From Mytilus edulis (taxonomy: Eukaryota), in NCBI RefSeq assembly GCF_963676685.1, contig NC_092347.1, positions 84,816,001-84,880,000 of the forward strand: a stretch of 64,000 nt of DNA, in the 5' to 3' direction. Position numbers and translations under genes: made by a program. Positions 7,901 through 61,100 of the stretch are shown here, piece by piece. Every line of letters begins with the position of its first letter. Position 1 is the first letter of the stretch. A model generated the notes under the pieces. The model saw only the letters and a list, made by a program, of their open reading frames with translations. It had not been told where the DNA came from and made no database searches.

Positions 7901-10900
7901 TTAGAATAGCAAAATATTAAAAATTTGGAAGGTTGGCACAAATAGACATGGTGTTTATACTAATATTATCCAAGTGCAAGGTTTTTCAGGGCTAGGTTTA
8001 AAACGTATGATAAATTCAAAATGGAAAGATGCAGCAGGACAGACAATTGTTGCAGATAAATAAATTCTGGGTTGTAATGCTTGTTTGATTAACAGAAATC
8101 TGGACATGCATTACATGAATACAGATAGATTAATGAGCCCTTAGAATTGTGGAAAAGGAAGGGATTTTATTCATCACTAGTACACTAGATACATTTATAA
8201 ATATGTTTTTCTATCAGTATCTTTTATGTTTTAAGAATGATCTTATTCATGTTAAGAAGAAAGGCAAGAAAAGGGGGAAGTACAGTCAATTGTCACAAGA
8301 TGCTAGTCTTTAAAATATGTATGTTTTGTACCAGGCTAGCATCTACTGGTACAAAACTACTATAAACCTGTAAATATGGGACCATTTTGGTCTTTAATTA
8401 AGCTTTGGTGCTTACAGCCATAATTATCTTGAATGCATCATTGTGGTTCTGACTATAGTAGATACTTTGTTCTCTGGTTCAAGGGAAAATTTGTCAATGA
8501 TAAATTTCAAATGCTTAATAAGTTCAACAAATGTAAGAGCCACGCATATTTGTTCTGTGATGTCCCAGTGAAAAACTTCTATCTCATGAAGCGACAAAGT
8601 CAAGCAGAAATCATCTGTTTCTGCTTTACAAAAGATAAAATTTGAGTCCTCTACAAGGTCTCTCAGAACGTTTCTTTCAAAGAATAGCTGAAAATTTGTT
8701 TTTTGATAAAATCCATCTCCCTTAACCAATGCATTGCAGCATAGGGAGATGCTTTCCCCTGCCGGCCTCTTTGACATTAATTTTGGCAGACTTTTTCTAT
8801 TCCATGTCATTTAAATGTTTGCTCCCAATACAGTGTAAGGCTAGCGCTTTTAAGATCGTGATTTAAAATAAGTCAAGCCAGGAACAAACTCAGCGGATAC
8901 GATCAAATTCCGGCACGATTTCGATTTTTTTTAAATAATAAAAAAAAAAAAATTCTGAAACGCAAATAAAATTATTGGGGCGGCAAGTTTTTCAGTGGGT
9001 CGGGCGGCAATGCCAAACAAATGAAATTTTATTTTAGGCCTTATTGATTCAACAAATCAGAAGATTGGGAGTCCAAATATCTACAGAAAACAGAAAGGGA
9101 GAGTCTATAACACCCCACTTTTTGAACTGCGCAGACCCCCATGGAGACCTCAAATATATGATTTTCCTTTTTTTTTCTTCTTCAATCTCTTCTATAAAAT
9201 AGTTGTACCAATAATAATAAAAGAGACAAATAACAAAATTTTACCGAGCACAGAGATCAAAGATACTTCAAATGATTACTAATTATGAATTTATTTGAAT
9301 TTTATTATTTTAATAACACACATGTACACAATGTAATCCGGAAAGTGATGAATCCGGAGACGTTTGTCCTTACATGTATATTGATTATCGATTTTAACAT
9401 AAAAATGATGCCCTTAAAAATCTAAAAATCATTTAATTATACGTAATATGATATGTTTTATCGTTTTATTGTATAATATCACAGTTTTTCTTAGTGGTTG
9501 GTGGTTTTTGGGGTGTTTGGCGGTGTTCGGTGGTGTGCGGTGGTGTTCGGTGGTGAAAAAGACCCACCCTTATCTTACCAGTACAGCTTTCTGTCCATTA
9601 TAAAGATACTTAGTCTAATGTTTAACTTAGATTCTTACTGTATTTGTTTTTGTTTTACAGAAACCTTCAAAGAAAGCAAGAATAGACAATGAAAATATTC
9701 CTCCCTCACCAAAAACAGATTATGCAAATAAAGAACCAGCTCCTCTTTTAAAGAAAGGTGATACAAGTCCAGTCAGGGACCTTCCATCTTCTCCTGGTGG
9801 GGATATGCCAAAAACTGAATGTTTATCCCCTGAACAGAAAGATCGAGTGAACGGGAATAAAGCTGCTGCTTTGGCCAAGTTAAGAGAAAAACAGACCAAT
9901 GGATTACTGACTAAAGTTGGTGATTCCTGGTATAAAGCTCTTCAGGAAGAATTTACTAAACCATACTTTGTTGAGGTAAAGTTTGTTTTTGATGATGAAA
10001 GTTAATAATAAATAATTTGGTTGAATTAGATAAGAAGCCTACAGAGACTTTTCAGGCTTATTCATTCTCTCCAAATTAATTGATGATGATTAAAAGTGGT
10101 ATTTGGATCCTTTTATACCACTGAGTGTTACCTTGTCATTTAGAAACTACCATTTTTCTATAGGAATCTATGAAAAACTTTAATTAGTACTAAATCAATC
10201 TTTGAAGTTTTAGTGCATTTTCCTTACTATGTTTTTACAATAAAGAACCATAAAAACCTGTGACAATTCTGCTTCTAGTGGTAAAAGTTTATTGAAATCT
10301 CAGCAGAAATATCCCAACAATAATTTTTGTATTTGAGTGTAAAGGAAAAAAGCATACATGACATCAACAGCAATCTAAAACTGAAACCTCTATTATTTTT
10401 CGTATGTATGTATCCTGCATTAAAGTATGGATTTTTAATAATGTTTTTTTTTTACAGTTGTCGAAGTTTGTAGAATCAGAAAGAAAAAAAGGAACAATTT
10501 ATCCTCCTGCTGACCAGGTCTTTAGCTGGACAAGGTATTGTAAAGTCAATGATGTAAGTTTGTAAGTATAGATTCTTATATTGAATATTGTGACCCATAT
10601 CAGTCCAAAAAACAATCATGCAAGCAAAAAAAAGGATTAAGTTGAACTTTGTTTGATGATGCCTTTAAATATTTAAATTTTATTTTATTAAATGTTTGGC
10701 AAACATCATGGTTCTTCTCGTATTGCCATGGCAAAATGGACTTGAAAGTTGCAAAGAAATGCACTGCAGATAATGGAGTTATCTCCACTTACATAACTTG
10801 CATAATGCATTTTATATGTAACCAATATTTCCTATGAACAGTGGTTGAAAAAGAAATTATTATCAGCTTTTATTATAGCTATTCATGCTGAATATAATTT

Positions 10901-13900
10901 CAGAAATAATTAATATTATTAGACTTTCCTCCAACAAAAACTTTTTGCATTCTTTTTGGGTGGCTGGACTGAAAGAAAAACATTTTTGATTCACTGCATT
11001 GTCAGTGTTTTTAAAATTCCAATTCTGTAATTGGTTGTTTTAAAAATTAAATTGTATGGGTTGTTTGGTAAAAAAAATAGTACCTTCTCAGAGTTTGGGT
11101 ATACTTTTTCTTGATCAGTCCCAATGGCTTGTTATTAACAATATTTATCAGTCAATTTGTGGACATGTACTTATGTGTACGTTCCACTCACATGTATGTA
11201 TAAAAATTTAGTATACACCAGTTCACTAGGTATCAGTAAGACATGTTACCCTACAAGACACATTATTATAACTTTTACTTGAAAATAATTAATGATGAAG
11301 TTGACAAAAGCAACAAGAATGAATAATACATCAAGTTCTTATTTTCAATTATCATAAGCTTGTTCCAGATCCATGAAATATATAAAGGAAGATGTTTATC
11401 TTTTAATGTTCTGTTTTGTATGTTAAAAAGAAGAATGATGTTATAGAAGATTGTACTGTATTATGTTAGATATGAAATAAAGATACACAATTAATTTTTA
11501 AGGTTTTCTGTAGTTTGATAATTGTCTCTCTTTCTATATAATTTAGGTAAAAGTAGTAATACTAGGACAGGATCCTTACCATGGACCAAGACAAGCACAT
11601 GGTGAGCTATAACTTATATTTATAACTTCAAAAAACATTACAAGTTGTACATATAAACTGGCTTACCTTAATAATTCTGTTGAAGTCTTTTATGGCAAGA
11701 ATGGATAAAGTCCAAAGCCAGCTCAGATAAAGATGGCAGGCTGGTAATTAAAGAAATGTTGGTACATTTTTTTACATAGTTTGTTTAATCAACTCATACA
11801 GCTTTCAAATTAGATCCCTTAAACTTCACAGTTTAGAACCTCAACAAAATTGAACTTGGTTTTTCAATGGTTTTCCTCATATAAACAAGATAGATGAATA
11901 AGGGTTCTTCAGTAGTTTTCCCAGCAGCTTTTTCTGAAATCTTAATTGTTATTCTCACATTTTTGTCCATTCTTCTAAAATGGCAATAAAAAATACCACC
12001 AATAATTTCTAAATTTACAGTAAGAAGTTTTTTTAATTCATGATATAATTATGTTTAAATTTATATATTATTTCAGGTCTTTGTTTTAGTGTACAGAAGG
12101 GAGTGCCTCCTCCACCAAGGTAAATTTCGTAGGTTCTTGTTGCTATCTATTAATAACTCCCAGTGGTGAAAAAAATCTGAATAAATTACCAGTCAAAAAT
12201 AAACTCAGAATCAAGGAACTCATATTACAGGAAAGCTATGTTCTATGACTAATCTGAAACCTTACTTCAGTGTTATTATCACAATAAATACTTTGATATT
12301 ACAAATATACTCTCAAGTTATTAAGTACAACTGACATTCTGAATTTTCAACATCAATGGTTAAAGGATTTTCAACATCAATGGTTAAAGGATGAGTTATT
12401 CCCCTTGGTTAATTGAAATAGGAAAAAAATTAATGGTGAGTAGATTTGAATAAAAAGAAATGTGCGATAAATACAAAAGAAACAGAAACCCAATGACATG
12501 ATAAACAAATTGCAACAAGAGATAAATATATGGTCTTATAAAATAGACTGGTGTCTTCAGGACAAATTCTACAAAATTAAAACAACTATATATTTTCAGG
12601 TATTAAAAAAATCCACTTGACTAGAGACAGGCACACAAACTATTGTTGTGATTGTATTTATTATTTGGAATCTCAACCATCCCTATTGTCTATTGTTGCG
12701 ATTGTATTTATTATTTGGAATCTCAACCATCCCTATTGTCTATTGTTGTGATTGTATTTATTATATGGAATCTCAACCATCCCTATTGTCTATTGTTGTG
12801 ATTGTATTTATTATTTGGAATCTCAACCATCCCTATTGTCTATTGTTGTGATTGTATTTATTATATGGAATCTCAACCATCCCTATTGTCTATTGTTGAT
12901 ACCACTCCTGGTGGACTACTAGTCCCAGAGGTTCTCATGTCATGATAAATTAAGAAATATTAGATAGGACTGATACTGTATATAAATTAGGAGATGTGGT
13001 ATGGTTGCCACGGAGATGAACTATCCAATCCATGAATAGATAATCCACAGTATGTTGAATTGTTTTCTTTCAGCCTTGTTAATATGTATAAAGAACTGGT
13101 GAATGACATAAAAGGATTTGAACGTCCAAGTCATGGAACATTGACAGGCTGGTCTGAGCAAGGTAGGTTGTCCTTAGTTCATTAGAAATGTATTTGATGA
13201 CACAGGCAAGGTTATTTAAGACTTTGAAATCACTGCAAATTATATTAAACAAAATAACAATTTTAAAATTTAAAACCCTGTGTTTTATTGATGGAATCTT
13301 TAAATGTACACATTTGTGTTGTATTTCAACTTTTTGCTTTAACTTTGTTTGTCAGCTGCATTATCATATATGCATGATTACAAGGTGAACATTTTTCGTT
13401 TAATATTTTGTTTGAATTCCTGTTCAACAGTTGAAATCAAGCTATACTGCAATCATTCATTAGTTCTTTGTGGTAATAGTTGCAGCATCAGGTACTCAAG
13501 GGAGTGATGCTGGTTCATTGAAGTCTATAGTTTATTATTTTTACTCCTCTTTATCAACCTCTTGACAAATCCTTCCATGCAGGAATACATGATCCATTTT
13601 TGCCTTTTAATGACTCTTGCTTAATATGTTGTAATGTTTTAATAAAATTACATTTTAATATACTTTTAATTGATGCATTGCTTTTAAAAATGAACAATGT
13701 GATTTTAATGAAAAGACCTTTTCAGTACATGTAGAAGAAAACTAGTTAATAATACATAAAGCTTTTGAGAAACACTAGCTCATTGGCAACTTGGCAGTAA
13801 GACACTTTTTTGATATATGAGAAATTTCTTTTTTCTAACTAGGTGTCCTGTTTTGATATATGAGAAATTTCTTTTTTCTAACTAGGTGTCCTATTTTGAT

Positions 13901-15815
13901 ATATGAGAAATTTCTTTTTTCTAACTAGGTGTCCTGTTTTGATATATGAGAAATTTCTTTTTTCTAACTAGGTGTCCTGTTTTGATATATGAGAAATTTC
14001 TTTTTTCTAAATAGGTGTCCTGTTTTGATATATGAGAAATTTCTTTTTTCTAACTAGGTGTCCTGTTTTGATATATGAGAAATTTCTATTTTCTAACTAG
14101 GTGTCCTGTTGTTGAATGCCTGTTTAACTGTGAGGGCAAGTCAGGCAAATTCTCACAAAGACAAAGGTTGGGAGAAACTAACAGATGCTGTTATTTCTTG
14201 GCTAAATAAAAATTGTTCCGGTATAGTGTTTATGCTGTGGGGAGCTTATGCTCAAAAGAAAGGAGCTTTTATTGATAAGGTAAGATATTGGTAAGAAAAG
14301 TGATGCTCTTCATTTTGTAAACAAACGTTCTTGTTAGTTTTTAACAAATATATACTGTACTATTTTTGATTATGCAGAGGACATAGTTCTTTGTGTATGG
14401 ATATAAGGTTTGTAGTAAATGTTCTTTGTGTATGGATATAAGGTGTGTAGTAAATGTTCTTTGTGTATGGATATAAGGTGTGTAGTAAATGTTCTTTGTG
14501 TATGGATATAAGGTGTGTAGTAAATGTTCTTTGTGTATGGATGTAAGGTGTGTAGTAAATGTTCTTTGTGTATGGATGTAAGGTGTGTAGTAAATGTTCT
14601 TTGTGTATGGATATAAGGTGTGTAGTAAATGTCAATAAGACCACAGTCCTAATTGTACAAATCAAATATATCATGATCTCCTTATAGGTTCTAAACGATG
14701 GACAAACACCAAAACTTTTAATATTCTCATGTGTAAGGAATATAAGATAGACTCAAGATTTCAAACCCACAACATTCCCTTTTTACTTGGGTTAGGCACA
14801 TGACTTCATGAAACTATTTTACTGAGTATTCATTTAAAAGTCTCAGTGGAAGAAGTACATCAAATTTATCTATTTCTGTGAGATGTTTAAATTATGCCAA
14901 AAATGAAATTGGCTGTTCATGAGCCAAATAAGAACAACCAATCGAAAGTTGTATAGCATTACATTTATGCAAAATTCTCTTGATATCTGCTTCATATATC
15001 TGATACTTGTATGCCCTTGTGGCAGCAGAGGGGCATCAAGTGTTCCCTTTGTACATCTAAGTTTTATTTGCCTCAACCAAATGTTATGAAACTTATACAT
15101 GTTACTTATTACCACAAGATAGACAGAGCAAGTTGGAATTTGGGTGACATCACCTTTATCATTCTAGAGTTATACCCTTTTCTAAAGTATATGCAAACAG
15201 GCCCATCATCTGTGTTCCATGGACACATTCTGCATTTATTTTCTGTTCAAGATTAATTAACTGTTATTTTGCATTAAAAATTACAATGAAAATCAAACTA
15301 GAAAAAAAAATTTATTCAATATTTAAATATGAAACATAAAATAATCCCTTGCAGTTTGCACATCTGCGTAATTCATACATGATTCAACACAATCTTCAAT
15401 TCTTCAAACCTGACACAAATAGTTTTACCTTAAAATTATAGAAAAAGGTTAGAAAGATTCACAACTGCTATGTCTTTTCAAATGACAGCTAAAATTGATT
15501 TTGAATTTTGGCATTTAGAGAATGTGAATTGCTTCTGCAGTCACTGTTCGGAAGGTTTATCCCTGATAACAGTATAACTTAACAAAACTAAGCATAAGGA
15601 CAATATTGAATCGTAATCTTTTGTTGGAAGTTACATATGATTATATACTATTTTGTTTACAGAAGAAGCATCATATCCTGAAATCAGTCCATCCATCTCC
15701 GCTGTCTGCACACAGAGGATTCATTGGCTGCAAACATTTTTCAGAGTGTAACAATCTCCTCAACAAAGATGGCAAAACTCCTATTGACTGGTGTCGCCTA
15801 CCACCACAAGAGTGA
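4831..15815 (+). CDS. UNG: Uracil-DNA glycosylase (family 1, nuclear UNG2-like), 8 coding exons: 4831-4908, 9661-9975, 10458-10553, 11547-11601, 12077-12119, 13074-13162, 14101-14279, 15663-15815; 1008 nt, 335 aa
   Basis: All introns are GT-AG and phases join consistently (0,0,0,1,2,1,0). The spliced protein has [48 protein letters not shown] and HPSPLS, plus an N-terminal PIP box and RPA2-binding motif. Confidence 0.96.
5275..6219. mobile_element. Mutator-like MITE in UNG intron 1
   Basis: Long imperfect TIRs (~140-175 bp), GG...CC ends, 9-bp TSD TAGTAAATA (5266-5274, 6220-6228). Confidence 0.85.
7019..9569. mobile_element. MITE with CACCACCGAA-repeat TIRs (outer element of a nest)
   Basis: GGGTAGGTCTTTTCACCACCG...CACCCCAAAA is mirrored at 9507-9569; TSD not clearly recoverable. 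Confidence 0.7.
7129..9040. mobile_element. PIF/Harbinger-like non-autonomous element nested in the previous MITE
   Basis: GGCC ends, imperfect TIR sharing TTTGTTTGGCATTGCCG, TTA TSD on both sides. Confidence 0.8.
9661..9975 (+). CDS. UNG: UNG exon 2 (basic NLS-like KPSKKAR, SP motifs, RPA-binding [35 protein letters not shown])
   Basis: Acceptor ttttacag|, donor GAG|gtaaag, open frame of 105 codons. Confidence 0.93.
10458..10553 (+). CDS. UNG: UNG exon 3 ([32 protein letters not shown])
   Basis: ttttacag| acceptor, |gtaagt donor, conserved YPP..QVF.W motif. Confidence 0.95.
11547..11601 (+). CDS. UNG: UNG exon 4 ([18 protein letters not shown]), catalytic Asp motif
   Basis: atttag| acceptor, G|gtgag donor, GQDPYH motif. 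Confidence 0.96.
12077..12119 (+). CDS. UNG: UNG exon 5 ([15 protein letters not shown])
   Basis: tttcag| acceptor, AG|gtaaat donor, proline-rich loop. Confidence 0.95.
12641..12898. repeat. 50-bp minisatellite x5 in UNG intron 5
   Basis: Unit TATTGTTGTGATTGTATTTATTATTTGGAATCTCAACCATCCCTATTGTC at 50-bp spacing. Confidence 0.95.
13074..13162 (+). CDS. UNG: UNG exon 6 ([29 protein letters not shown])
   Basis: ttctttcag| acceptor, AAG|gtaggt donor. Confidence 0.95.
13808..14110 (+). repeat. 43-bp tandem repeat x7 spanning the UNG intron 6/exon 7 junction
   Basis: Unit TTTTGATATATGAGAAATTTCTTTTTTCTAACTAG|GTGTCCTG; junctions at 13843, 13886, 13929, 13972, 14015, 14058, 14101. Confidence 0.97.
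14101..14279 (+). CDS. UNG: UNG exon 7 ([25 protein letters not shown]...[18 protein letters not shown])
   Basis: ctaactag| acceptor, AAG|gtaaga donor, conserved uracil-pocket Asn. Confidence 0.95.
14386..14632. repeat. 35-bp minisatellite x7 in UNG intron 7
   Basis: Unit GTTCTTTGTGTATGGATATAAGGTGTGTAGTAAAT. Confidence 0.95.
15008..15240 (+). mobile_element. Short degraded HINE-like element in UNG intron 7
   Basis: 5' ATGCCC...GGGGCAT hairpin and 3' TGTGTTCCATGGACACA hairpin, as in other HINEs here. Confidence 0.45.
15663..15815 (+). CDS. UNG: UNG exon 8 ([20 protein letters not shown]...PIDW), stop TGA
   Basis: tttacag| acceptor (CAG-AAG-AAG, NAGNAG type), HPSPLS leucine loop. Confidence 0.95.
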
Positions 15816-15910
15816 AAAATAGAATGGCTAGGATATTGATTGAAAGCTGTACACTGCCAAACATCTCAAATACGGCAACTGTAAATCAGTGTTAGTGTTT
15901 TGATACCAAA

Positions 15911-16202
15911 TTAGTGTTGGTGTAATTTAATTATACTTTATGTATGCTATACAAGTGCCTATTGTGAATACTAAATGTGATTTAGTGTTGGTGTACATAT
16001 ATTTCACAGTACATGTTTGCTATACAAGTGCTTGTTGTGAATACTAAATGTGATTTAGTGTTGGTGTAAATATATTTCACAGTACATGTTTGCTATACAA
16101 GTGCTTGTTGTGAATACTAAATGTGATTTAGTGTTGGTGTAAATATATTTCACAGTACATGTTTGCTATACAAGTGCTTGTTGTGAATACTAAATGTGAT
16201 TA
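15911..16202 (+). repeat. 73-bp tandem repeat (3 copies + 1 diverged) in UNG 3'UTR
   Basis: TTTAGTGTTGGTGTA... recurs at 15981, 16054, 16127; diverged copy at 15911. Confidence 0.93.
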
Positions 16203-16252
16203 AAGATTTGCTCTAAAGTATTGATACATCAAAATACCTAAAAATGAGTATA

Positions 16253-16258
16253 AATAAA
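16253..16258 (+). terminator. Probable UNG polyadenylation signal AATAAA
   Basis: First AATAAA I found downstream of the stop codon. Confidence 0.5.
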
Positions 16259-16991
16259 TGAGAGCACCTAAAAAATAATTGCACACATTTTATGTGATCA
16301 TTATTAGGCCAACTAAAATTAATTAGTAGATTTTCATCCAAAGTTTTGAAAAAAATGGGGCGGGTGGGAGGATTTTATTTTTTAAATTTTATTGAATGAA
16401 ACCTTCTTTTGATCGACGTGAACTTCATATATATATGACGCAAGTGTTATTATTAGCTTATATCATGTACATGTGTAAACATGTATTAAGAATCGTACAT
16501 ATTTTTCATATTCTTAAATAAATAACTCTGATTGGCAAGGACTGTTCTACATGAAATTGCTACATGTACTTAAAAAACCTACTTTCAGTATAAACAGTAA
16601 AATCATGGAGAAATTCTCTATTCAGTTGGACTTACCAACTCCAAATTTATTTTGCTTTCGAAGCGATGGTTTGTAGTCCCCATAAAAAAATGCAAATGCA
16701 ATGGTATGCAACACATGTATTATGAATGAAATGAGAACTCAAACAGTGTTGGAACTGGTAGGGTTGTGCTTTTAAGATTTAAGTTATGCAAGACTGAAGC
16801 CAAGACTAAAGCATATATACATAATTAGTATTTACATTGTAAAACATGAAGTTGTTTAATGACTCTTTTAAAAGTGTTTTGTGTTTTTAAACAAAACCAA
16901 TAGCCATGGGTAAATCTAAGGGCTTTCTATAACACAATTTGTATGTTTGCCGACTTTTTAACTCAATATAGATCAATATACGGTCATAGAT

Positions 16992-17016
16992 CACAGGGGC
17001 TTGTTAAGCCCCTGTG
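16992..17016. other. 25-bp hairpin insertion with 7-bp TSD (candidate transposon excision footprint)
   Basis: CATAGAT|CACAGGGGCTT-GTT-AAGCCCCTGTG|CATAGAT. Confidence 0.7.
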
Positions 17017-20451: not shown

Positions 20452-23200
20452 TTTTTATACGCCCGGGACGGGACGTATTATGGTATACCGTTGTCCGTCC
20501 GTCCATCTGTCCGTCCGTCCGTCTGTCCGTCCGTCGTCCACACTTCGGACAATAACTCAAAAACACCTACACCAATTTCCATGAAACTTAAGTGAATTGT
20601 TTATATCTATTGACGTAAGCTCCCTTTCGTTTTTTTTTAATTTCAGATTTTAAGTTTTGGATTTATGGGGCTTTATTCATAAAAAAGGGGGGATTTTCAA
20701 CACTTCGGACAATAACTCAAAAAGGCTTTCACCAATGTCCATGAAACTTTGGTGAATTGTTTATATCTATTGATGTAAGCTCCCTTTCGTTTTTTTTTAA
20801 TTTCAGATTTTAAGTTTTGGATTTATGGGGCTTTATTCATAAAAAAGGGGGGATTTTCAACACTTCGGACAATAACTCAAAAAGGCTTTCACCAATGTCC
20901 ATGAAACTTTGGTGAATTGTTTATATCTATTGATGTAAGCTCCCTTTCGTTTTTTTTTAATTTCAGATTTTAAGTTTTGGATTTATGGGGCTTTATTCAT
21001 AAAAAAGGGGGGATTTTCAACACTTCGGACAATAACTCAAAAAGGCTTTCACCAATGTCCATGAAACTTTGGTGAATTGTTTATATCTATTGATGTAAGC
21101 TCCCTTTCGTTTTTTTTTAATTTCAGATTTTAAGTTTTGGATTTATGGGGCTTTATTCATAAAAAAGGGGGGATTTTCAACTTTTTGGACAATAACTCAA
21201 AAAGGCTTTCACCAATGTCCATGAAACTTTGGTGAATTGTTTATATCTATTGATGTAAGCTCCCTTTCGTTTTTTTTTAATTTCAGATTTTAAGTTTTGG
21301 ATTTATGGGGCTTTATTCATAAAAAAGGGGGGATTTTCAACACTTCGGACAATAACTCAAAAAGGCTTTCACCAATGTCCATGAAACTTTGGTGAATTGT
21401 TTATATCTATTGATGTAAGCTCCCTTTCGTTTTTTTTTAATTTCAGATTTTAAGTTTTGGATTTATGGGGCTTTATTCATAAAAAAGGGGGGATTTTCAA
21501 CACTTCGGACAATAACTCAAAAAGGCTTTCACCAATGTCCATGAAACTTTGGTGAATTGTTTATATCTATTGATGTAAGCTCCCTTTCGTTTTTTTTTAA
21601 TTTCAGATTTTAAGTTTTGGATTTATGGGGCTTTATTCATAAAAAAGGGGGGATTTTCAACACTTTGGACAATAACTCAAAAAGGCTTTCACCAATGTCC
21701 ATGAAACTTTGGTGAATTGTTTATATCTATTGATGTAAGCTCCCTTTCGTTTTTTTTTTAATTTCAGATTTTAAGTTTTGGATTTATGGGGCTTTATTCA
21801 TAAAAAAGGGGGGATTTTCAACACTTTGAACAATAACTCAAAAAGGCTTTCACCAATGTCCATGAAACTTTGGTGAATTGTTTATATCTATTGATGTAAG
21901 CTCCCTTTCGTTTTTTTTTAATTTCAGATTTTAAGTTTTGGATTTATGGGGCTTTATTCATAAAAAAGGGGGGATTTTCAACACTTCGGACAATAACTCA
22001 AAAAGGCTTTCACCAATGTCCATGAAACTTTGGTGAATTGTTTATATCTATTGATGTAAGCTCCCTTTCGTTTTTTTTTAATTTCAGATTTTAAGTTTTG
22101 GATTTATGGGGCTTTATTCATAAAAAAGGGGGGATTTTCAACACTTCGGACAATAACTCAAAAAGGCTTTCACCAATGTCCATGAAACTTTGGTGAATTG
22201 TTTATATCTATTGATGTAAGCTCCCTTTCGTTTTTTTTTAATTTCAGATTTTAAGTTTTGGATTTATGGGGCTTTATTCATAAAAAAGGGGGGATTTTCA
22301 ACACTTTGGACAATAACTCAAAAAGGCTTTCACCAATGTCCATGAAACTTTGGTGAATTGTTTATATCTATTGATGTAAGCTCCCTTTCGTTTTTTTTTA
22401 ATTTCAGATTTTAAGTTTTGGATTTATGGGGCTTTATTCATAAAAAAAGGGTGATTTTTAACACTTCGGACAATAACTCAAAAAGGCTTTCACCAATGTC
22501 CATGAAACTTTGGTGAATTGTTTATATTTATTGATGTAAGCTCCCTTTCAATTTTTATAAATTTCAGATTTTAAGTTTTGGATTTATGGGGCTTTATTCA
22601 TAAAAAAAAAGGGTGATTTTTAACACTTCGGACAATAACTCAAAAAGGCTTTCACCAATGTCCATGAAACTTTGGTGAATTGTTTATATCTATTGATGTA
22701 AGCTCCCTTTCAATTTTTATAAATTTCAGATTTTAAGTTTTGGATTTATGGGGCTTTATTCATAAAAAAAGGGTGATTTTTAACACTTCGGACAATAACT
22801 CAAAAAGGCTTTCACCAATGTCCATGAAACTTTGGTGAATTGTTTATATCTATTGATGTAAGCTCCCTTTCAATTTTTATAAATTTCAGATTTTACATTT
22901 CCGTGTTATGAATTTTTATGCTTAAAAAAGGGGGGATTTTTCCAATTTCAGGACAATAACTAACACTTTCACAAAATTTTATGTATGGATGAAAAATTAA
23001 AGACAACAAACTTAGTTAAATTTGAGGTAGCCTTAATAGTGCCAATTTTTTTGTGCATTTTTATTTATTATTTGGGGGGGGGGGGGGGTATTTGACAGGG
23101 CTCACACTATTTCTAGTTGATCATATAAATTCATTTAAAGCATAAAAGACAAGTTAAAAGAGCAACGGGCGTATCATGCGCTAAAGCGCAGCCCTTTATT
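20452..23200 (+). mobile_element. Helentron-associated non-autonomous element (HINE/DINE-1-like) carrying a satellite array
   Basis: T-run start, subterminal IR ATACGCCCG (20457-65)/CGGGCGTAT (23166-74), (GTCC)n microsatellite, central tandem array, 3' hairpin TGCGCT-AA-AGCGCA (23177-90). Confidence 0.88.
20541..22920. repeat. 160-bp satellite, ~15 near-identical copies
   Basis: CACTTCGGACAATAACTCAAAA... recurs every 160-162 bp. Confidence 0.97.
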
Positions 23201-52100: not shown

Positions 52101-53214
52101 ATAAATGAAAAATAAATAAATAAATAAAACAAATAAATAAATTTCTAAAAACATAGAATTAATAAATAAACTACAATGAACTCTTTTCATTTACATATAA
52201 TTTTATAGCATGTTTTGGTCAGTGATTCTCTAATATCAATTATTAAAATCTTGAATGTGTTACCAGACTGCCTTAATTTCACTTAAACATGGTAAATTGA
52301 AAATATTTCCTTGTTATATTGATCAGATAGTCATATCTTGACATGGAATTTACAAAAGGAGTGTATAAAATGGGATTTTACAGTTTGTAAAGATTTACGT
52401 CGTTTTATTTTTTAGAGGGCAACAGTGTACTTGTATTACTCTTGTCAGATACATATCACAAAAGTTCATTGACTGTGATACATAAAAATCATGTAATAAA
52501 TATTGGCCTTTAAAATGCGTTAAGAAGTCAAGATTGAAAGAAAATGAATAATACTGTGTAACTCAGTTGGAATTTCATTGAACTTCTTAAAAATAAAGAG
52601 ACATTGGTGTTTGTAGTCCTTTATATGTATTTTGTATTCATTGATAAAAGTTGTAGTTAAAACATAATTTTTTAAAAACTGTTTTGATTTCCTGTTTCAA
52701 AGGGGGCTGTATTATAGTGATTTATAATAAGTCATCATGTTTGTCTGTCTATATATATTATAGATCCCTGCATTCCGTTAATCTTTTTTATTTGTTAGTA
52801 TTTAAACCAACGTAGTAGAATTGAACCTTATCATTGTGCTTAAGGACAAAAGCTGTGTACATTGTAACTTAATATGTTTTTAATGTCAGTTTCATGACTA
52901 TATATTTCAAAACTATGAAATCAATATTATGAAAATAATAAGGGATAAAGGTTTGGCCCATATCATTAGTGTTACCACAAATTACGCATTAAATTGAGGA
53001 AATGAAGTTCTTCCTTAAAAATACTTTTACTACGTAATCACAAAGATTTTTTGGTTTTCATTTGTGGAATGTTTGATTACAGAACTTTTCCTTTTTAAAA
53101 ATCAATTATCTATACAATATCCTTTTAGTAGAAACAATTTCATATTGACCACTTAAAACATTTTTTGTCACACCTGGTCAAAATAGGTAGAAGCAAGACT
53201 TGTCAGTTTATGAT

Positions 53215-53857
53215 GTCAACCCATTAACAGTTGTTAAAGGTTGTGATAAGGTAGTGAGACATGCCTCTGTGTTAACACATTAACAGTTGTTAAAGGTTGT
53301 GATAAGGTAGTGAGACATATCTCTGTGTCAACACATTAACAGTTGTTAAAGATTAATTTTGTTATAAGGTAGTGAGACATGCCTCTGTGTTAACACATTA
53401 ACAGTTGTTAAAGGTTGTAGTAAGGTAGTGAGACATGCCTCTGTGTCAACACATTAACAGTTGTAAAAGATTAATTTTGTTATAAGGTAGTGAGACATGC
53501 CTCTGTGTTAACACATTAACAGTTGTTAAAGGTTGTAGTAAGGTAGTAAGACATGCCTCTGTGTCAACACATTAACAGTTGTTAAAGGTTGTGATAAGTT
53601 AGTGAGACATGCCTCTGTGTTAACAGATTAACAGTTGTTAAAGGTTGTGATAAGGTAGTGAGACATGCCTCTGTGTTAACACATTAACTGTTGTTAAAGA
53701 TTAATTTTGTTATAAGGTAGTGAGACATGCCTCTGTGTTAACACATTAACAGTTGTTAAAGGTTGTAGTAAGGTAGTGAGACATGCCTCTGTGTTTACAC
53801 ATTAACAGTTGTTAAAGGTTGTAGTAAGGTAGTGAGACATGCCTCTGTGTTAACAGT
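53215..53857. repeat. 56/62-bp minisatellite, ~11 copies
   Basis: CATTAACAGTTGTTAAAGGTTGTGATAAGGTAGTGAGACATGCCTCTGTGTTAACA with a 6-bp longer variant interspersed. Confidence 0.95.
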
Positions 53858-55457
53858 TTTTGATTCAGCCATGCTGGAGATGGTACAGATTTCTAAATTG
53901 AAGACATATCATGAAACTAAATATGTATTTATACTAATTGGCTATTTGCAGACACTTCATACACAATTTGATCATTTACTGTCCACTTTTGATATGCTTT
54001 TTTGCTAATTTGGTTAGACCTTTCTGTCAACAGAATATTTGGCAAAGCCTTTTCTGTAAACAGGATATTTGGTCAGGCCTTTTCTGTAAATTTGATATTT
54101 GGTCAGGCCTTTTCTGTAAATTTGATATTTGGTCAGGCCTTTTCTGTAAATAGGATATTTGGTCAGGCCTTTTCTGTAAAAAGGATATTTGGTCAGACCT
54201 TTTCTGAAAACAGGATATTTGGTAAGGCCATTTCTGTGAACAGGATATTTGGTCATGCTTTTTATGAACAGGATATTTTGTCTGTTTGGTCTTCTCACTC
54301 TATGAACAGGATATATATTTTAAAATTAAGAATGAAAATGGGGAATGTGTCAAAGAGACAACAACCTGACCATAGAACAAAAAAGGATATTTGGTCAGCC
54401 TTTTAGTGTTGCCTTTTCTGTAAACGGGATATTTGGTCATGCTTTTTATGAACAGGATATTTTGTCTGTTTGGTCTTCTCACTCTATGAACAGGATATTT
54501 TGTCTGTTTGGTCCTCTCTCTCTCTCTCTCTCTCTGTGGACAGGATATTTTGTCTGTTTGGTCTTGTCTCTCTGTGAACAGGATATTTCTCTGTTTGGTC
54601 TTCTTTCTCTGTGAACAAGATATTTTGTCTGTTTGGTCTTCTCTCTCCGTGAACAGGATATTTTGTCCGTTTGGTCTTCTCACTCTATGAACAGGATATT
54701 TTGTCTGTTTGGTCCTCTCTCTCTGTGAATAGGATATTTTGGCTGTTTGGTCTTCTCTCTCCGTGAACAGAATATTTTGTCTGTTTGGTCTTCTCTCTCT
54801 CTGTGAACAGGATATTTTGTCTGTTTGGTCTTCTCTCTCTGTGAACAGGATATTTTAAAATTGAGAATGAAAATGGGGAATGTGTCAAAGAGACAACAAC
54901 CTGACCATAGAACAAAAAAGGATATTTGGTCAGCCTTTTAGTGTTGCCTTTTCTGTAAACAGGATATTTGGTCATGCTTTTTATGAACAGGATATTTTGT
55001 CTGTTTGGTCTTCTCACTCTATGAACAAGATATTTTAAAATTGAGAATGAAAATGGGGAATGTGTCAAAGAGACAACAACCTGACCATAGAACAAAAAAG
55101 GATATTTGGTCAGCCTTTTAGTGTTGCCTTTTCTGTAAACGGGATATTTGGTCATGCTTTTTATGAACAGGATATTTTGTCTGTTTGGTTCTCTCTCTGT
55201 GAACAGGATATTTTGTCTCTGGTTTTCTCTCTCTGTGAACAGGATATTTTGTCTCTGGTTTTCTCTCTCTGTGAACAGGATATTTTGTTTGTTTGATCTT
55301 CTTTCTGTGAACAGGCTATTTTGTCTCTGGTTTTCTCTCTCTGTGAACAGGATATTTTGTCTGTTTGGTTTTCTCTCTCTGTGAATAGGATATTTTGTCT
55401 GTTTGGTTCTCTCTCTGTGAACAGGATATTTTGTCTCTGGTTTTCTCTCTCTGTGAA

Positions 55458-56534
55458 CAGTGTTCTAGGATTCCCATTACCCGTTACCCGGGGTAAGTGG
55501 ATTAGGACAACGGGTAAGTCATTTTTTAGCCTTTGTCACCCGGTGGTAAGTCAATTTTCAAGTTCGGGGAAGCCGAAAAACTCTTGAAATTTCCCGATCC
55601 TCTTCAATTTTCCCATATCTGCTTTTTATTTTTATTAAATCACGAGAAAAAACTTTGAAAAAAAGATCGAACATTTTGTCGATGTCTATCGGCGCTTTTA
55701 TTCAAGCACTCGTTTACTAGGTGTAATCAAGCGCAAAAGAGACCACATTCTTCTCCTATCATTCTAAAAGTCGGTCACGGTGTCGGTAAAATCGGAAAAT
55801 CCGGATTGATAACTGGTGGTTAAATCGGGACATAAACGATTTTTTTTCTTGTCATCGGAGGAAAATAAACTTACAGTTGCATTTATTATAGCTCTTAATA
55901 AATGACATAGTAATAACTATAACATATTTGTCAAATTTAGTAAGAAATCGTTTTTTTTAAATTTTGTACAAAATTCAATCGTATCCGAATCCAGCTTTGT
56001 TCAGACAAACTTCACAACATATAATTTAAAGCATGTCATAAAAGTTTTTAAATTTAAAATCTTATCCTTAATCATTAATGTTCAGTGAATCAGCCTGAAA
56101 AATATTCAGTATTTTATAAAGAGCATGTCTGATTTTTAAAAAGAGTTGCATGTAAGTCCCTTATTTTTTTTACAGTGGATTATTGGTATGAAAGTCAGTG
56201 AAGTACTGTTATAGTTCAATGTACTTTTCTGGTGGTATAGGTATATAGTTACAATTAAGCCGTTACAATTAAGCCATATATTTCAAATACTTTTCAATAC
56301 ACTTTAGTCATCATTGCTTCATACAAAACATCATTTGACATCACAAAAAAGGGTACTTTCTGAAGCATGAAAAAGGTGCCAGGAAATGGCTAGAATGCAG
56401 GATTTTGCATCATTTACCCCAGACCCCCGGCGTCCGCATTGGTTGGCGGATTTAACTTTTAGATGTGGGTAAGTAATTTTTTTATTGATCTTACCCGTGG
56501 TAAGTCAAGGTGCCAAAAAAATCCTAGAACACTG
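55458..56534. mobile_element. hAT-like MITE inserted in the satellite
   Basis: TIR CAGTGTTCTAGGAT/ATCCTAGAACACTG; flanking duplication TGTGAA (6 bp); GGTAAG subterminal motifs. Confidence 0.85.
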
Positions 56535-57806
56535 TGTGAACAGGATATTTTGTTTGTTTGATCTTCTTTCTGTGAACAGGATATTTTGTCTCTGGTTTTC
56601 TCTCTCTGTGAACAGGATATTTTGTCTGTTTGGTCTTCTCTCTTTCTGTGAACAGGATATTTTGTTTGTTTGATCTTCTTTCTGTGAACAGGATATTTTG
56701 TCTGTTTGGTCTTCTCTCTCTGTGAACAGGATATTTTGTCTGTTTGGTCTTCTCTCTCTGTGAACAGGATATTTGTCTGTTTGATCTTCTTTCTGTGAAC
56801 AGGATATTTTGTCTGTTTGGTATTCTTTCTGTGAACAGGATATTTTGTCTGTTTGGTCTTCTCTCTCTGTGAACAGGATATTTTGTCTGGTCTTCTCTCT
56901 CTGTGAACAGGATATTTTGTCTGTTTGATCTTCTTTCTGTGAACAGGATATTTTGTCTGGTCTTCTCTCTCTGTGAACAGGATATTTGTCTGTTTGGTCT
57001 TCTCTCTCTGTGAACAGGATATATTTTAAAATTGAGAATGAAAATGGGGAATGTGTCAAAGAGACAACAACCTGACCATAGAACAAAAAAGGATACTTGG
57101 TCAGCCTTTTAGTGTTGCCTTTTCTGTAAACAGGATATTTGGTCATGCTTTTTAAGAACAGGATATTTTGTCTGTTTGGTCTTCTCACTCTATGAACAGG
57201 ATATTTTAAAATTGAGAATGAAAATGGGGAATGTGTCAAAGAGACAACAACCTGACCATAGAACAAAAAAGGATATTTGGTCAGCCTTTTAGTGTTGCCT
57301 TTTCTGTAAAAGGGATATTTGGTCATGCTTTTTATGAACAGGATATTTTGTCTGTTTGGTCTTCTCACTCTATGAAGAGGATATTTTGTCTGTTTGGTCC
57401 TCTCTCTCTCTGTGTGGACAGGATATTTTGTCTGTTCGGTCTTGTCTCTCTGTGAACAGGATATTTCTCTGTTTGGTCTTCTTTCTCTGTGAACAAGATA
57501 TTTTGTCTGTTTGGTCTTCTCTCTCCGTGAACAGGATATTTTGTCCGTTTGGTCTTCTCACTCTATGAACAGGATATTTTGTCTGTTTGGTCCTCTCTCT
57601 CTGTGAATAGGATATTTTGGCTGTTTGGTCTTCTCTCTCCGTGAACAGGATATTTTGTCTGTTTGGTCTTCTCTCTCTCTGTGAACAGGATGTTTTGTCT
57701 GTTTGGTCTTCTCTCTCTGTGAATAGAATATTTTGTCTGTTTGGTTCTCTCTCTCTGTGAACAGGAAATTTTGTCTGTTTGGTGTTGTCTCTTTATGAAT
57801 AGGATA

Positions 57807-58131
57807 TTTTTATGCCCCACCTACAATAGTAGAGGGGCATTACGTTTTCTGGTCTGTATGTCTGTTCGTCTGTCCATCCGTCTGTCTGTCTGTTCATTCG
57901 TCCATGCATCCGTTCGTCCCACTTCAGGTTAAAGTTTTTGGTCAAGGTAGTTTTTGGTGAAGTTGAAGTCCAATCAACTTGAAACGTAGTACACATGTTC
58001 CTTATGATATTATCTTACTAATTGTAATGCAAAAATAAGAGTTTTGACCCCAATTTCACAGTCCACTGAACATAGAAAATGATAGTGTGAGTGGGGCATC
58101 TGTGTAAGTAACTGGGGACAAATTCTTGTTT
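57807..58131 (+). mobile_element. Short HINE inserted in the satellite
   Basis: TTTTTATGCCCCAC...GTGGGGCAT subterminal IR, (GTCY)n tract, inserted in a T-run. Confidence 0.75.
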
Positions 58132-61100
58132 CTCTTTGGTTTTCTCTCTGTGAACAGGATTTTTTGTCTGTTTGGTTTTCTCTCTCTGTGAACAGGATTT
58201 TTTGTCTGTTTGGTTTTTCTCTCTCTGTGAACAGGATTTTTTGTCTGTTTGGTTTTCTCTCTCTGTGAACAGGATTTTTTGTCTCTTTGCTTTTCTCTCT
58301 CTGTGAACAGGATATTTTGTCTCTTTGGTTTTCTCTCTCTGTGAACAGGATATTTTGTCTCTGGTTTTCTCTCTGTGTGAACAGGATATTTTGTCTGTTT
58401 CGTCTTCTCACTCTGTGAACAGGATATTTTGTCTGTTTGGTTTTCTCACTCTGTGAACAGGATATTTTGTCTCTTTGGTTTTCTCTCTCTGTGAACAGGA
58501 TATTTTGTCTGTTTGGTCTTCTCTCTTTCTGTGAACTGGATATTTTGTTTGTTTGATCTTCTTTCTGTGAACAGAATATTTTGTCTCTTTGGTTTTCTCT
58601 CTCTGTGAACAGGATATTTTGTCTGGTTGGTCTTCTCTCTTTCTGTGAACAGGATATTTTGTCTGTTTGATCTTCTCTCTCTGTGAACAGGATTTTTTGT
58701 CTTTTTGGTTTTCTCTCTCTGTGAACAGGATTTTTTGTCTGTTTGGTTTTCTCTCTCTGTGAACAGGATATTTTGTCTGTTTGATCTTCTCTTTCTGTGA
58801 ACAGGATATTTTGTGTTTGGTCTTCTCTCTCTGTGAACAGGATATTTTGTCTGTTTGGTCTTGTCTCTCTGTGAACAGGATATTTCTCTGTTGGTCTTCT
58901 CTTTCTGTGAACAGGATATTTTGTCTGTTTGGTCTTGTCTCTCTGTGAACAGGATATTTCTCTGTTGGTCTTCTCTTTCTGTGAACAGGATATTTTGTCT
59001 GTTTGGTCTTCTCTCTCTTTCTGTGAACAGGATATTTTGTCTGTTTGGTTCTCTCTCTCTCTCTGAACAGGATATTTTGTATGTTTGGTCTTCTCTCTCT
59101 CTGTGAATAGGATATTTTGTCTGTTTGGTCCTCTCTCTCTCTGAACAGGATATTTTGTCTGCTTGGTCTTGTCTCTCTGTGAACAGGATATTTCTCTGTT
59201 GGTCTTCTCTTTCTGTGAACAGGATATTTTGTCTGTTTGGTCTTCTCTCTCTGTGAACAGGATATTTTGTCTGTTTGGTCCTCTCTCTCTCTGAACAGGA
59301 TATATTGTCTGTTTGATCTTTTCTCTCTGTGAACAGGATATTTCATTCCTTCATCTTCACTTCTTGAGAATATGATATTTGTCTGTTTGGTCTTCTCTCT
59401 CTGTGAACATGATACTTTTACTAATCCAAATCAATTATTTATGTGTTTACTAATTGTATTAATAACTCATTCAGAAATGAATAATAATAAAAGCTGGAGG
59501 ATATTTGAATTATTAATATTTATTTATTTCGATCAGATTTGTAAACAAAACTCTTTCCTTTTTTTATACCATTGTATATGTTTTGTCCTTGTAATGATAG
59601 ATATCTCTTTAGTATGTTTGATGTGAACAGATTTAATGTACCATATACCATTCAAGCAGACTATAATGGCAGGATAGATATAAAAATGTAAAAGATTGTT
59701 GTAAGTTAGAACCCAAAGTGTCTAGGGATTGTGACAAGAAACAATAAAATTCAGGTTAATTCAGCATTTTGTTTTAATTTCAACTAAATATTGTGGTCAA
59801 GGTTGAAATCTTGTTTAGTACCAAAATTAAACTGTTTATGTGCAATGTACAACCGGTAAAACTATATATTGTGAAAAAAACTGCTGTATACATGTTTCGG
59901 TTGAGAGAAAAACAAATCAGAAGGAGACTTCAACAACATTATCACCCAAAAAATCCTTTGGTGAATAAATAGGTGAAAATATATCTATTACATATATGAA
60001 ATTAAATATACCTACCCATACACTGTAGTGAAGGTACATTTGGGGTGTATTTTACCCATCTATTTGTTTTTAATGGTCAAGTGCACTTATTCATATGATA
60101 ACACTCCATGATAACACTTCATTTTGAATCAAAAAGTTAATACATTTGTAGTTAATGCTCCTCTCTGAGATCAGGAAATGCTGGGATTGGTTTTCTCTAA
60201 ACTGTGTTCTTGTTTGTAATAGTGAAAGTAAGCTTACCGTTCAAATTTTTACCCTCCTATTTATTGCAATTATTACACTTTTGCAATCTTTGATTTCTTT
60301 GAAAGTGGCACATCATGTTGTTTTAGTGAAATAATTTATGAATCTTTAAACAAGTGCTTTCAAATTTTCCTTTATTGTTACTGATGACAAAAATGAGGTC
60401 CAAGTTTGATAGTGAGGATTTTCACTTTTGCTGTTCAGAAGTTATGGTCCTAAATTTATTAGAATTTGGTACTTTTAGGAGTTTCCATGCAACAACTTGA
60501 CAATTGTTGTATTAATTCTTTTCAAATGTTTATATGTTGTTACTGATGATCTAAAATCTAGTTCAATATTTGTGGTTTTCACCATTGCTGTTCAGAGGTT
60601 AATGGTCTTTTTTGATTGGAAAATGGATTTTTATGGCATTTCCATCCTGTTTTAGTTGAAAGCATTCTAATTATCATTTTCAAATATTGATATGTTACTG
60701 ATGACAAAATGAAGATCTAGCATAATATTGTAATCAAAAACACTAGTTGCCATCATTTTGACGGCCTGTTTTCGTTGTTGTGTGATTGGTCAAATTGTAG
60801 TCTAATTCCATTTCAAATTTATTTTCAATATGTAGCACTGTCAAATTGAGTATTCTTAGGTCCATTTTCTTAAAAATTTACACTTTTGTTGTGATTGGAG
60901 AATGTAAGGTACCTTAGATTTTAAAATTTTGTAGGTACTGTCGGTACATGTACTTACTTAGTTTCCAGAGTAACTGGATTCTAACTATTAAATTTAAGCA
61001 ATTAGCTGTACACCTTAACATGTGTTTTTGGAAGCTTTTATGCATGACCACTTTACTGACTTCTGATTTAATTATACTACAATTCCCATTTTATTCTGAT

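What the first reader, a model, noticed from the sequence alone, without database searches (positions are those of the whole stretch)
13808..14110. UNG exon-7 splice acceptor amplified 7x: six upstream stop-codon decoys, each also an AG|GT junction
Seen: a 43-bp unit containing the pyrimidine tract, CTAAC, AG and the first 8 nt of exon 7 is repeated 7 times. Only the last AG (14100) gives the UNG frame. Each of the six upstream AGs gives G-V-L-F-TGA, truncating the enzyme before the catalytic Asn and His. The true copy differs by one base (TTCTATTTTC vs TTCTTTTTTC). Known: the spliceosome generally favours the first suitable AG after a branch point, and premature stops trigger NMD. Inference: either this VNTR tunes UNG dosage via unproductive splicing, or exon definition picks the last copy, or splicing to a decoy regenerates CAAG|GTGTCC, a weak donor that could be re-spliced recursively to the correct mRNA.
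Basis: partly seen in the sequence, partly recalled or inferred. Interest (0 to 1): 0.82.

Follow-up and report, generated by a model that had tools for sequence, protein, structure and literature searches.

The report
Copied splice acceptor in mussel UNG
An intron of a mussel's uracil-DNA glycosylase gene ends in seven tandem copies of its own 3' splice site plus the first 8 bases of the next exon; this is a small example of a known repeat type ("mirage" minisatellite), and the RNA available uses only the genuine last copy.

Summary
A 43-bp unit (35 nt of intron end plus 8 nt of exon) is repeated 7 times at 13808-14108. Each of the six upstream AGs would read G-V-L-F-stop, and only the last AG (14100) keeps the UNG frame.

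The regulatory and recursive-splicing ideas have no support. Three RNA data sets show only the junction 13162>14101: 2 raw reads, one Iso-Seq contig and one RNA contig from a related species. None puts RNA on the upstream copies. Depth is very low, however, and all the RNA carries non-reference SNP alleles, so splicing of an array-bearing allele was not observed directly.

A DNA contig from the best-matching run goes straight from the left flank into a single unit of the last-copy type. This suggests a one-unit allele, so the array is probably a young length polymorphism.

This kind of repeat is already described: amphioxus "mirage" minisatellites (Adh3, globin BflGb6), and, as a mirror image at a donor site, the human F7 intron-7 VNTR. 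The scan has already noted many such arrays on other pieces of this same mussel genome, some with 30-45 copies.

One junction-spanning unit among this gene's five arrays is what chance gives (P about 0.34). Verdict: a real but ordinary new member of a known kind.

The parts
13074..13162 (+).
   Evidence: RNA junctions 12119>13074 and 13162>14101 in X24, X18 and X16; splice-site sequences
13163..14100 (+). Intron of 938 nt; its last 293 nt are the tandem array
   Evidence: (skips 938, GT..AG)
13808..14108 (+). Seven 43-bp copies of [35 nt of intron end with T-tract, CTAAC and TAG, plus 8 nt of exon start GTGTCCTG]. TRF extends the match to 14115.
13841..14057 (+). Six upstream pseudo-acceptors (TAG|GTG). 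Their AGs are at 13841-42, 13884-85, 13927-28, 13970-71, 14013-14 and 14056-57. The in-frame TGA of each lies at 13854-56, 13897-99, 13940-42, 13983-85, 14026-28 and 14069-71.
   Evidence: AG list; G-V-L-F-stop for all six
14099..14100 (+). Authentic acceptor AG, the only one seen in RNA
   Evidence: junction 13162>14101 in 2 raw reads (X24), a 1246-nt Iso-Seq contig (X18) and an 803-nt RNA contig (X16)
14088..14088 (+). A instead of T, private to the last (authentic) copy; it interrupts the T-run of the pyrimidine tract. The one-unit DNA contig lays its single unit on copy 7, which carries this A.
   Evidence: (X1 record 3, pieces 12869-13809 and 14071-14415)
14101..14279 (+).
15663..15815 (+). 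Coding part of the last UNG exon, with the HPSPLS motif (catalytic His) and the stop codon

Best explanation
This is a 'mirage' minisatellite. A 43-bp segment that happened to span the intron/exon boundary of the mussel UNG gene was duplicated in tandem and then expanded to seven copies. An expansion of a segment spanning a 3' splice site always leaves the last copy joined to the rest of the exon, so the gene stays intact. The six upstream copies become intronic pseudo-acceptors.

The spliceosome uses the last copy (shown for the gene, inferred for the array-bearing allele). The likely reason is that only this copy is followed by real exon sequence (GC 39% against 26% in the array, purine-rich stretches) and lies nearest the downstream donor, that is, exon definition. 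Any leak to an upstream copy meets a stop after four codons and would be removed by NMD (inferred).

The array is young (copies 98-100% alike), probably polymorphic in length, and has no function of its own. At most it is a slightly deleterious burden.
For: - Anatomy: seven near-identical units, with the terminal one carrying the only private change in the pyrimidine tract. This is the pattern of tandem-repeat turnover, with boundary units left out of homogenisation, described for amphioxus mirages (PMC3087553).
- RNA: all junctions seen go from 13162 to 14101 in three independent RNA data sets. RNA depth on 13749-13945 is zero, and depth in 13946-14142 equals what the exon part alone gives.
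- Polymorphism: DNA contig X1 record 3 (1288 nt, depth 4.66) joins 13809 to 14071 with 'AT' in place of TTG. That is a one-unit form whose junction words are absent from the reference and so must come from reads. Other X1 contigs add depth of about 5 on the array interior.
- Uniqueness: the unit is found only at this locus in the genome, so it arose locally.
- Chance: the gene holds five minisatellites (20% of 10456-16300), and the other four are not junction-derived. The expected number of junction-spanning units by chance is 0.41, with P(>=1) = 0.34.
- Precedent: amphioxus Adh3 and globin mirages splice normally. The F7 VNTR pseudo-sites are functional but unused.
Against: - The RNA evidence is thin: 2 raw reads at the junction, and contigs drop rare isoforms.
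- All RNA carries G at 10496 and 13129, where the reference and the X1 DNA have A. None of it is shown to come from an array-bearing allele.
- By sequence the pseudo-acceptors are as good as the true one or slightly better (uninterrupted T6 tract), so some use of them is plausible.
- The one-unit contig could in principle be a product of graph simplification in a low-coverage run.
- No long reads were available to confirm seven copies.
Confidence: 0.7

Rival explanations
1. Leaky decoys. A noticeable fraction of pre-mRNA from array-bearing alleles is spliced to an upstream AG. This gives a transcript with a premature stop that NMD degrades, so longer arrays lower UNG output. The result would be a hypomorphic VNTR allele, or in the reader's version a dosage-tuning device.
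For: The six upstream sites are identical to the true site or have a better T-tract. All give a stop after 4 codons, more than 50 nt before the last exon junction. The RNA data have almost no power and are not from the reference haplotype. A second UNG-like locus exists and could buffer a loss.
Against: No read or contig supports any decoy junction, and no RNA lies on copies 1-6 in three RNA runs. Described mirages and the F7 VNTR leave splicing undisturbed. A likely one-unit allele in the same species speaks against a conserved regulatory role.
Confidence: 0.18
2. Recursive splicing. The donor is first joined to an upstream copy, which regenerates CAAG|GTGTCC. This is then used as a donor to step along to the last AG and yields the correct mRNA.
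For: Every copy is an AG|GT junction, and the end product would be indistinguishable from the mRNA seen.
Against: The regenerated donor is weak: GTGTCC has no +4A, +5G or +6T, whereas 4 of the gene's five donors have A at +4 and 4 have G at +5. The intron is short (938 nt), while known recursive sites sit in very long introns with near-consensus donors (own knowledge). The last step would be a 43-nt intron. AG|GT follows from the Gly-Val codons of the conserved GVLLLN motif.
Confidence: 0.03
3. Assembly artefact. The real genome has one unit and the seven copies were created by the assembler.
For: A contig of the best DNA holder has only one unit and otherwise matches the reference almost perfectly (2 other letters in 1286 nt).
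Against: Assemblers collapse tandem repeats rather than invent them. The copies carry three distinct point differences. The one-unit contig differs at the array's left edge (AT for TTG), as a separate allele would. Other X1 contigs lie on the array interior (depth 6.4-7.0 against the 1.4-1.7 that the one-unit contig contributes). Four other arrays of the same style lie in the same gene.
Confidence: 0.05

Closest known systems
Amphioxus 'mirage' minisatellites (Adh3: Canestro et al. 2002, Nucleic Acids Res 30:2871, cited in PMC3087553; globin genes BflGb6 and BflGb9: PMC3087553)
   Same: Both are minisatellite-like tandem duplications of an exon-intron boundary. BflGb6 copies the 3' end of an intron plus the 5' part of the next exon, exactly as here. 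Many units carry AG/GT signals, regular splicing is kept, haplotypes differ in copy number (6 against 3), and boundary units escape homogenisation.
   Different: The phylum (mollusc) and the gene (UNG) differ. The unit is short (43 bp, against 150-160 bp in the globins, but within the 10-72 bp given for Adh3) and holds only 8 exon bases. Somatic instability was not examined here.
Human F7 intron-7 37-bp VNTR (Borensztajn et al. 2006, PMC1557585)
   Same: A polymorphic minisatellite whose terminal unit spans an exon-intron boundary, so that 5-9 identical splice sites compete. Only the exon-adjacent one is used, and the others are functional but silent.
   Different: It is the mirror image. F7 multiplies the 5' splice site and the authentic copy is the first; here the 3' splice site is multiplied and the authentic copy is the last. 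The mechanism proposed for F7 (5'>3' scanning for the donor) cannot be carried over directly.
Recursive splice sites / ratchet points (Drosophila Ubx and long vertebrate introns; own knowledge)
   Same: An acceptor juxtaposed to a donor (AG|GT).
   Different: The regenerated donor is weak, the intron is short, and there is no conservation and no intermediates. See the membership test.
Other splice-junction minisatellites noted by this scan in the same mussel genome (nidogen about 44 copies, PCM1 about 33, GPR155, SLC46 genes; unchecked AI notes)
   Same: The same architecture: intron end plus exon start repeated ahead of the real exon. Where RNA was looked at, the last copy is the one used.
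   Different: This array is small (7 copies). It also shows a likely one-unit allele and an in-frame stop in every decoy.

Membership tests
Mirage minisatellite (tandem duplication of an exon-intron boundary) | Head-to-tail array with a minisatellite-size unit (about 10-160 bp) | tested here: met
   43 bp x 7.1, 97% matches, TRF score 586
Mirage minisatellite (tandem duplication of an exon-intron boundary) | The unit contains intron end plus exon start (or exon end plus intron start), and the terminal unit is the authentic junction | tested here: met
   35 nt of intron plus 8 nt of exon. The last copy's AG (14100) is the acceptor used in RNA.
Mirage minisatellite (tandem duplication of an exon-intron boundary) | Regular splicing is kept despite the extra splice signals | tested here: inconclusive
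   Only 13162>14101 is seen in 3 RNA runs. Depth is very low, however, and all the RNA carries non-reference SNP alleles, so the array status of the expressed alleles is unknown.
Mirage minisatellite (tandem duplication of an exon-intron boundary) | Length polymorphism or instability between haplotypes | tested here: inconclusive
   A one-unit contig in DNA run X1 (13809 > AT > 14071, depth 4.66) sits beside contigs on the array interior. This suggests 1-unit and 7-unit forms, but no long reads were available.
Mirage minisatellite (tandem duplication of an exon-intron boundary) | Origin from the gene's own sequence, not from a dispersed element | tested here: met
   The unit occurs only at this locus in the 1.37-Gb assembly, and its exon part encodes the conserved G-V-L of UNG.
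F7-type VNTR of 5' splice sites | The repeated signal is the donor site, with the authentic copy first | tested here: not met
   Here the acceptor is repeated and the authentic copy is last. It works alike but is not a member.
Recursive splice site (ratchet point) | After the first splice, a strong donor close to GTAAGT/GTGAGT is regenerated | tested here: not met
   The regenerated site is CAAG|GTGTCC. The gene's own donors are gtaagt, gtgagc, gtaaat, gtaggt and gtaaga.
Recursive splice site (ratchet point) | Splicing intermediates or lariats from stepwise removal | not testable with these tools
   This needs nascent-RNA or lariat data. The one reads call showed no RNA on the array.
Regulated unproductive splicing (poison acceptor coupled to NMD) | Isoforms with a premature stop are detectable and rise when NMD is blocked | not testable with these tools
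   No decoy junction is seen at the available depth, and no NMD-inhibited data exist.
Family-1 uracil-DNA glycosylase (UNG), the host gene | Conserved motifs GQDPYH, GVLLLN and HPSPLS in order | tested here: met
   [12 protein letters not shown] at 11547-11601. GVLLLN starts the exon at 14101 (E 7e-27 to human UNG). HPSPLS lies in the last exon (E 1e-17). Pfam UDG hits on single exons fall below the cut-off because the pieces are short.

The most novel reading that the evidence does not exclude
The array is a heritable dosage modifier. Pre-mRNA from long alleles is partly spliced to decoy acceptors and destroyed by NMD, so copy number sets UNG level, and with it uracil-repair capacity, among individual mussels. 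Together with the many other junction arrays noted in this genome, this would point to a mussel-specific mutational process that seeds tandem duplications at splice junctions, with consequences for gene dosage.
Probability: 0.1. Interest if true: 0.6.

Novelty: new member of a known kind. Interest (0 to 1): 0.2.

Why it matters
On its own it matters little. It is one more exon-boundary minisatellite, and a small one. Its modest value is as a natural competition experiment for 3' splice-site choice: seven practically identical branch/tract/AG modules 43 nt apart, of which the one used has the weakest tract. There is probably a one-unit allele to compare it with, and a phasing SNP lies 33 nt from the donor. 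As part of the set of such arrays in this mussel genome, it adds to the question of whether tandem duplications arise preferentially at splice junctions there. This gene alone gives no sign of such a preference.

Tried and rejected
- Two metagenome scans, one for the copy-to-copy junction and one for the authentic junction, found nothing. No independent contigs came from other animals.
- Canestro et al. 2002 (PMC117041) is not held. It is cited only through PMC3087553.
- I tested whether the other four arrays of the gene are also junction-derived. They are not: their alignment scores to all junctions lie at or barely above the null range.
- Rfam on 9000-17000 gave no family.
- RNA folding of the array gives a long imperfect hairpin (z = -5.9). 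This follows from the 10-nt palindrome AGAAATTTCT inside a repeated unit, and I give it no functional weight.
- I considered that CTAAC is the branch point of its own AG. I rejected this because its A lies only 4 nt before the AG. TTGAT about 29 nt upstream, or the CTAAC of the previous copy, are better placed (inference).
Exons were searched one by one by reference. The only joining was adding the single phase base G in a local script to read the frame.
- The large protein searches were not used, because the gene's identity was clear from the PDB search.

Full report
**What is there.** The window is AT-rich (67% A+T) and lies on a chromosome-size contig of a 1.37-Gb assembly. Run labels and earlier notes point to a mussel.

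On the + strand lies a family-1 uracil-DNA glycosylase gene.
- Exon pieces read [12 protein letters not shown] (11547-11601), [14 protein letters not shown] (12077-12119)...GWSEQ (13074-13162), [19 protein letters not shown]... (14101-14279) and ...HPSPLS...stop (15663-15815).
- The 60-residue peptide of 14100-14279 aligns end to end with human UNG at E 7e-27.
- The last exon aligns at E 1e-17.
- Pfam UDG hits on single exons are below the cut-off only because the pieces are short.
- All five internal junctions of this part of the gene are confirmed by RNA, and all are GT..AG.

**The repeat.**
- TRF reports 13808-14115, period 43, 7.1 copies, 97% matches, score 586.
- Written in register, the seven copies are identical except for 13893 (G>A, copy 2), 14011 (C>A, copy 5) and 14088 (T>A, copy 7).
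- Each unit holds 35 nt of intron end (TTTTGATATATGAGAAATTTCTTTTTTCTAACTAG) and the first 8 nt of the exon (GTGTCCTG).
- The 26-nt copy-to-copy junction occurs six times, against none in shuffles.
- The unit is found nowhere else in the genome, so it arose here.
- With the phase-1 donor at 13162, each of the six upstream AGs reads G-V-L-F-TGA, while the last AG gives the open 179-nt exon.

**RNA.** One search for runs and one laying of reads were allowed. I laid a raw-read RNA-seq run of the same species label (X24), an Iso-Seq run kept as contigs (X18), an RNA run of a related organism (X16) and the best DNA holder (X1).
- The junction 13162>14101 is seen in 2 raw reads of X24, in a 1246-nt X18 contig that runs from 10456 to 15991 through all exons, and in an 803-nt X16 contig.
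- No junction to any upstream copy is listed.
- RNA depth on 13749-13945 is zero in all three RNA runs.
- Depth in 13946-14142 equals what the 42 exon bases alone contribute. For example, X18 gives 0.99 against 4.43 x 42/197 = 0.94.

So the normal mRNA uses the last AG. Two limits apply. First, two raw reads cannot exclude even a large minority of decoy use; contigs drop rare forms, and NMD would remove the products. Second, all three RNA sets carry G at 10496 and 13129, where the reference and the X1 DNA have A (table 3). None of this RNA is shown to come from the reference haplotype, and whether the expressed alleles carry the array is unknown.

**DNA.** In X1 a 1288-nt contig (depth 4.66) covers 12869-13809 and 14071-14415, with only the two letters AT between (tables 5c and 8). 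That is a form with a single unit, laid on copy 7 (the copy with A at 14088), in which TTG at the unit's left edge is replaced by AT.
- The 31-letter words across that edge do not exist in the reference, so they must come from reads. I take this as a real one-unit allele rather than a collapsed path (inference).
- This contig contributes only about 1.4 and 1.7 to the two bins over the array, while the observed depths are 6.4 and 7.0. Other X1 contigs therefore lie on the array interior, as expected if the sample also holds the multi-unit form (inference).
- The likeliest picture is a length polymorphism (1 against 7 units) on closely related haplotypes.
- An assembly artefact is unlikely, because the copies carry three different point changes and assemblers collapse rather than create such arrays.
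- Long reads were not available to settle this.

**Is the position special?** The gene is full of minisatellites. There are five arrays between 12343 and 16201, making 20% of 10456-16300. The other four show no similarity to any junction beyond the null range. Under random placement, the expected number of units spanning one of the ten junctions is 0.41, with P(at least one) = 0.34. So this gene gives no evidence that the junction attracted the duplication.

**How it most likely works.** A segment spanning the acceptor was duplicated, with at most 2 nt of microhomology in register (TT at both edges, read), and then expanded. Such an expansion leaves the last copy continuous with the exon.

By sequence the upstream copies are as good as the true one or better: they have an uninterrupted T6, where the true copy has TATTTT. 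The choice must therefore come from context.
- Only the last copy is followed by exon-like sequence (GC 39% against 26% in the array).
- Only the last copy lies next to the exon's enhancers and nearest the downstream donor at 14279 (exon definition; inference from general knowledge).
- The CTAAC in each unit lies only 4 nt before its own AG and cannot be that AG's branch point. TTGAT about 29 nt upstream, or the CTAAC of the preceding copy, are better placed (inference).
- Leaks would carry a stop codon 11-13 nt into the extended exon and more than 50 nt before the last junction, which makes them NMD targets (inference).

**Recursive splicing.** This is improbable. The regenerated donor CAAG|GTGTCC lacks +4A, +5G and +6T, whereas 4 of the gene's five real donors have A at +4 and 4 have G at +5. 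The intron is only 938 nt, and the final step would be a 43-nt intron. The AG|GT coincidence follows from the codons G|GT GTC of the conserved GVLLLN motif.

**Comparison with what is known.** Tandem, minisatellite-like duplications of exon-intron boundaries are described in amphioxus as 'mirages'.
- They occur in Adh3 (units of 10-72 bp, somatic instability) and in globin genes.
- In BflGb6 the repeated piece is the 3' end of an intron plus the start of the next exon. Haplotypes carry 6 or 3 units, boundary units escape homogenisation, and RT-PCR shows regular splicing (PMC3087553).
- The human F7 gene has the mirror case: a 37-bp VNTR whose first unit spans the exon 7 donor. Its 5-9 identical donors are all functional, yet only the exon-adjacent one is used (PMC1557585).

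The array here meets the structural criteria of a mirage. The two behavioural criteria, normal splicing and length polymorphism, are supported but not proven for this locus. My literature searches found no report of such arrays in mussels.

The scan's own earlier notes list many in this same genome, some with 30-45 copies, with the same conclusion where RNA was examined. These are unchecked AI notes and are not counted as evidence here. I had found the mirage and F7 papers independently.

**Verdict.** The array is real and exactly as described, but it is an ordinary, small member of a known repeat type. The regulatory readings are not excluded but have no support. The most useful follow-up is allele-phased RNA from animals genotyped for the array.

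Noticed in passing
window 12869-14415 (X1 contig): A DNA contig of the best-matching run carries a single 43-bp unit, laid on copy 7 (the copy with A at 14088), with AT instead of TTG at 13810-13812. It otherwise differs from the reference at only 2 of 1286 positions. This is probably a one-unit allele on a closely related haplotype.
   Followed up: partly
window 10496 and 13129: All three RNA data sets (X24, X18, X16) read G where the reference and the X1 DNA read A. The expressed haplotypes sampled are not the reference one. Position 13129 lies 33 nt from the donor and could phase junction reads.
   Followed up: no
window 15056-15242 (inside the last UNG intron): A short stretch has enormous word depth in DNA (up to about 74,000 in X1) and high depth in all RNA runs, with many loose ends. 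It is a very abundant dispersed repeat. Rfam finds no family.
   Followed up: partly
window 12961-13157: Word depth is about 2,300 in X1, centred near 12988, just upstream of the exon at 13074. This is another high-copy repeat fragment.
   Followed up: no
window 15911-16201: A 73-bp x 4 minisatellite (94% matches) lies in the transcribed 3' UTR of UNG. RNA contigs enter it and break there.
   Followed up: no
window 12640-12898 and 14386-14632: Two more young intronic minisatellites lie in the same gene (50 bp x 5.2 and 35 bp x 7.1, 97-98% matches). They are not derived from any junction.
   Followed up: yes
window 13790-14140: Each unit contains the 10-nt palindrome AGAAATTTCT. The array is therefore predicted to fold into a long imperfect hairpin that pairs copies with each other (-88.4 kcal/mol, z = -5.9). 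This is probably just a by-product of repeating a palindrome.
   Followed up: partly
L004:1363-1701 (-) = G000:C2:72128281-72128430 region: A second UNG-like locus carries a 112-aa open frame that covers the equivalents of the last two UNG exons without the intron between them. It is 48% identical and keeps HPSPLS. It may be a paralog with a different exon structure.
   Followed up: partly
window 20540-22961 and 53214-59419: Large tandem arrays: 160 bp x 15 (97% matches), and a complex field of 36-38-bp units (TGAACAGGATATTTTGTCT...) of up to 76 copies, interleaved with 180-bp units.
   Followed up: no
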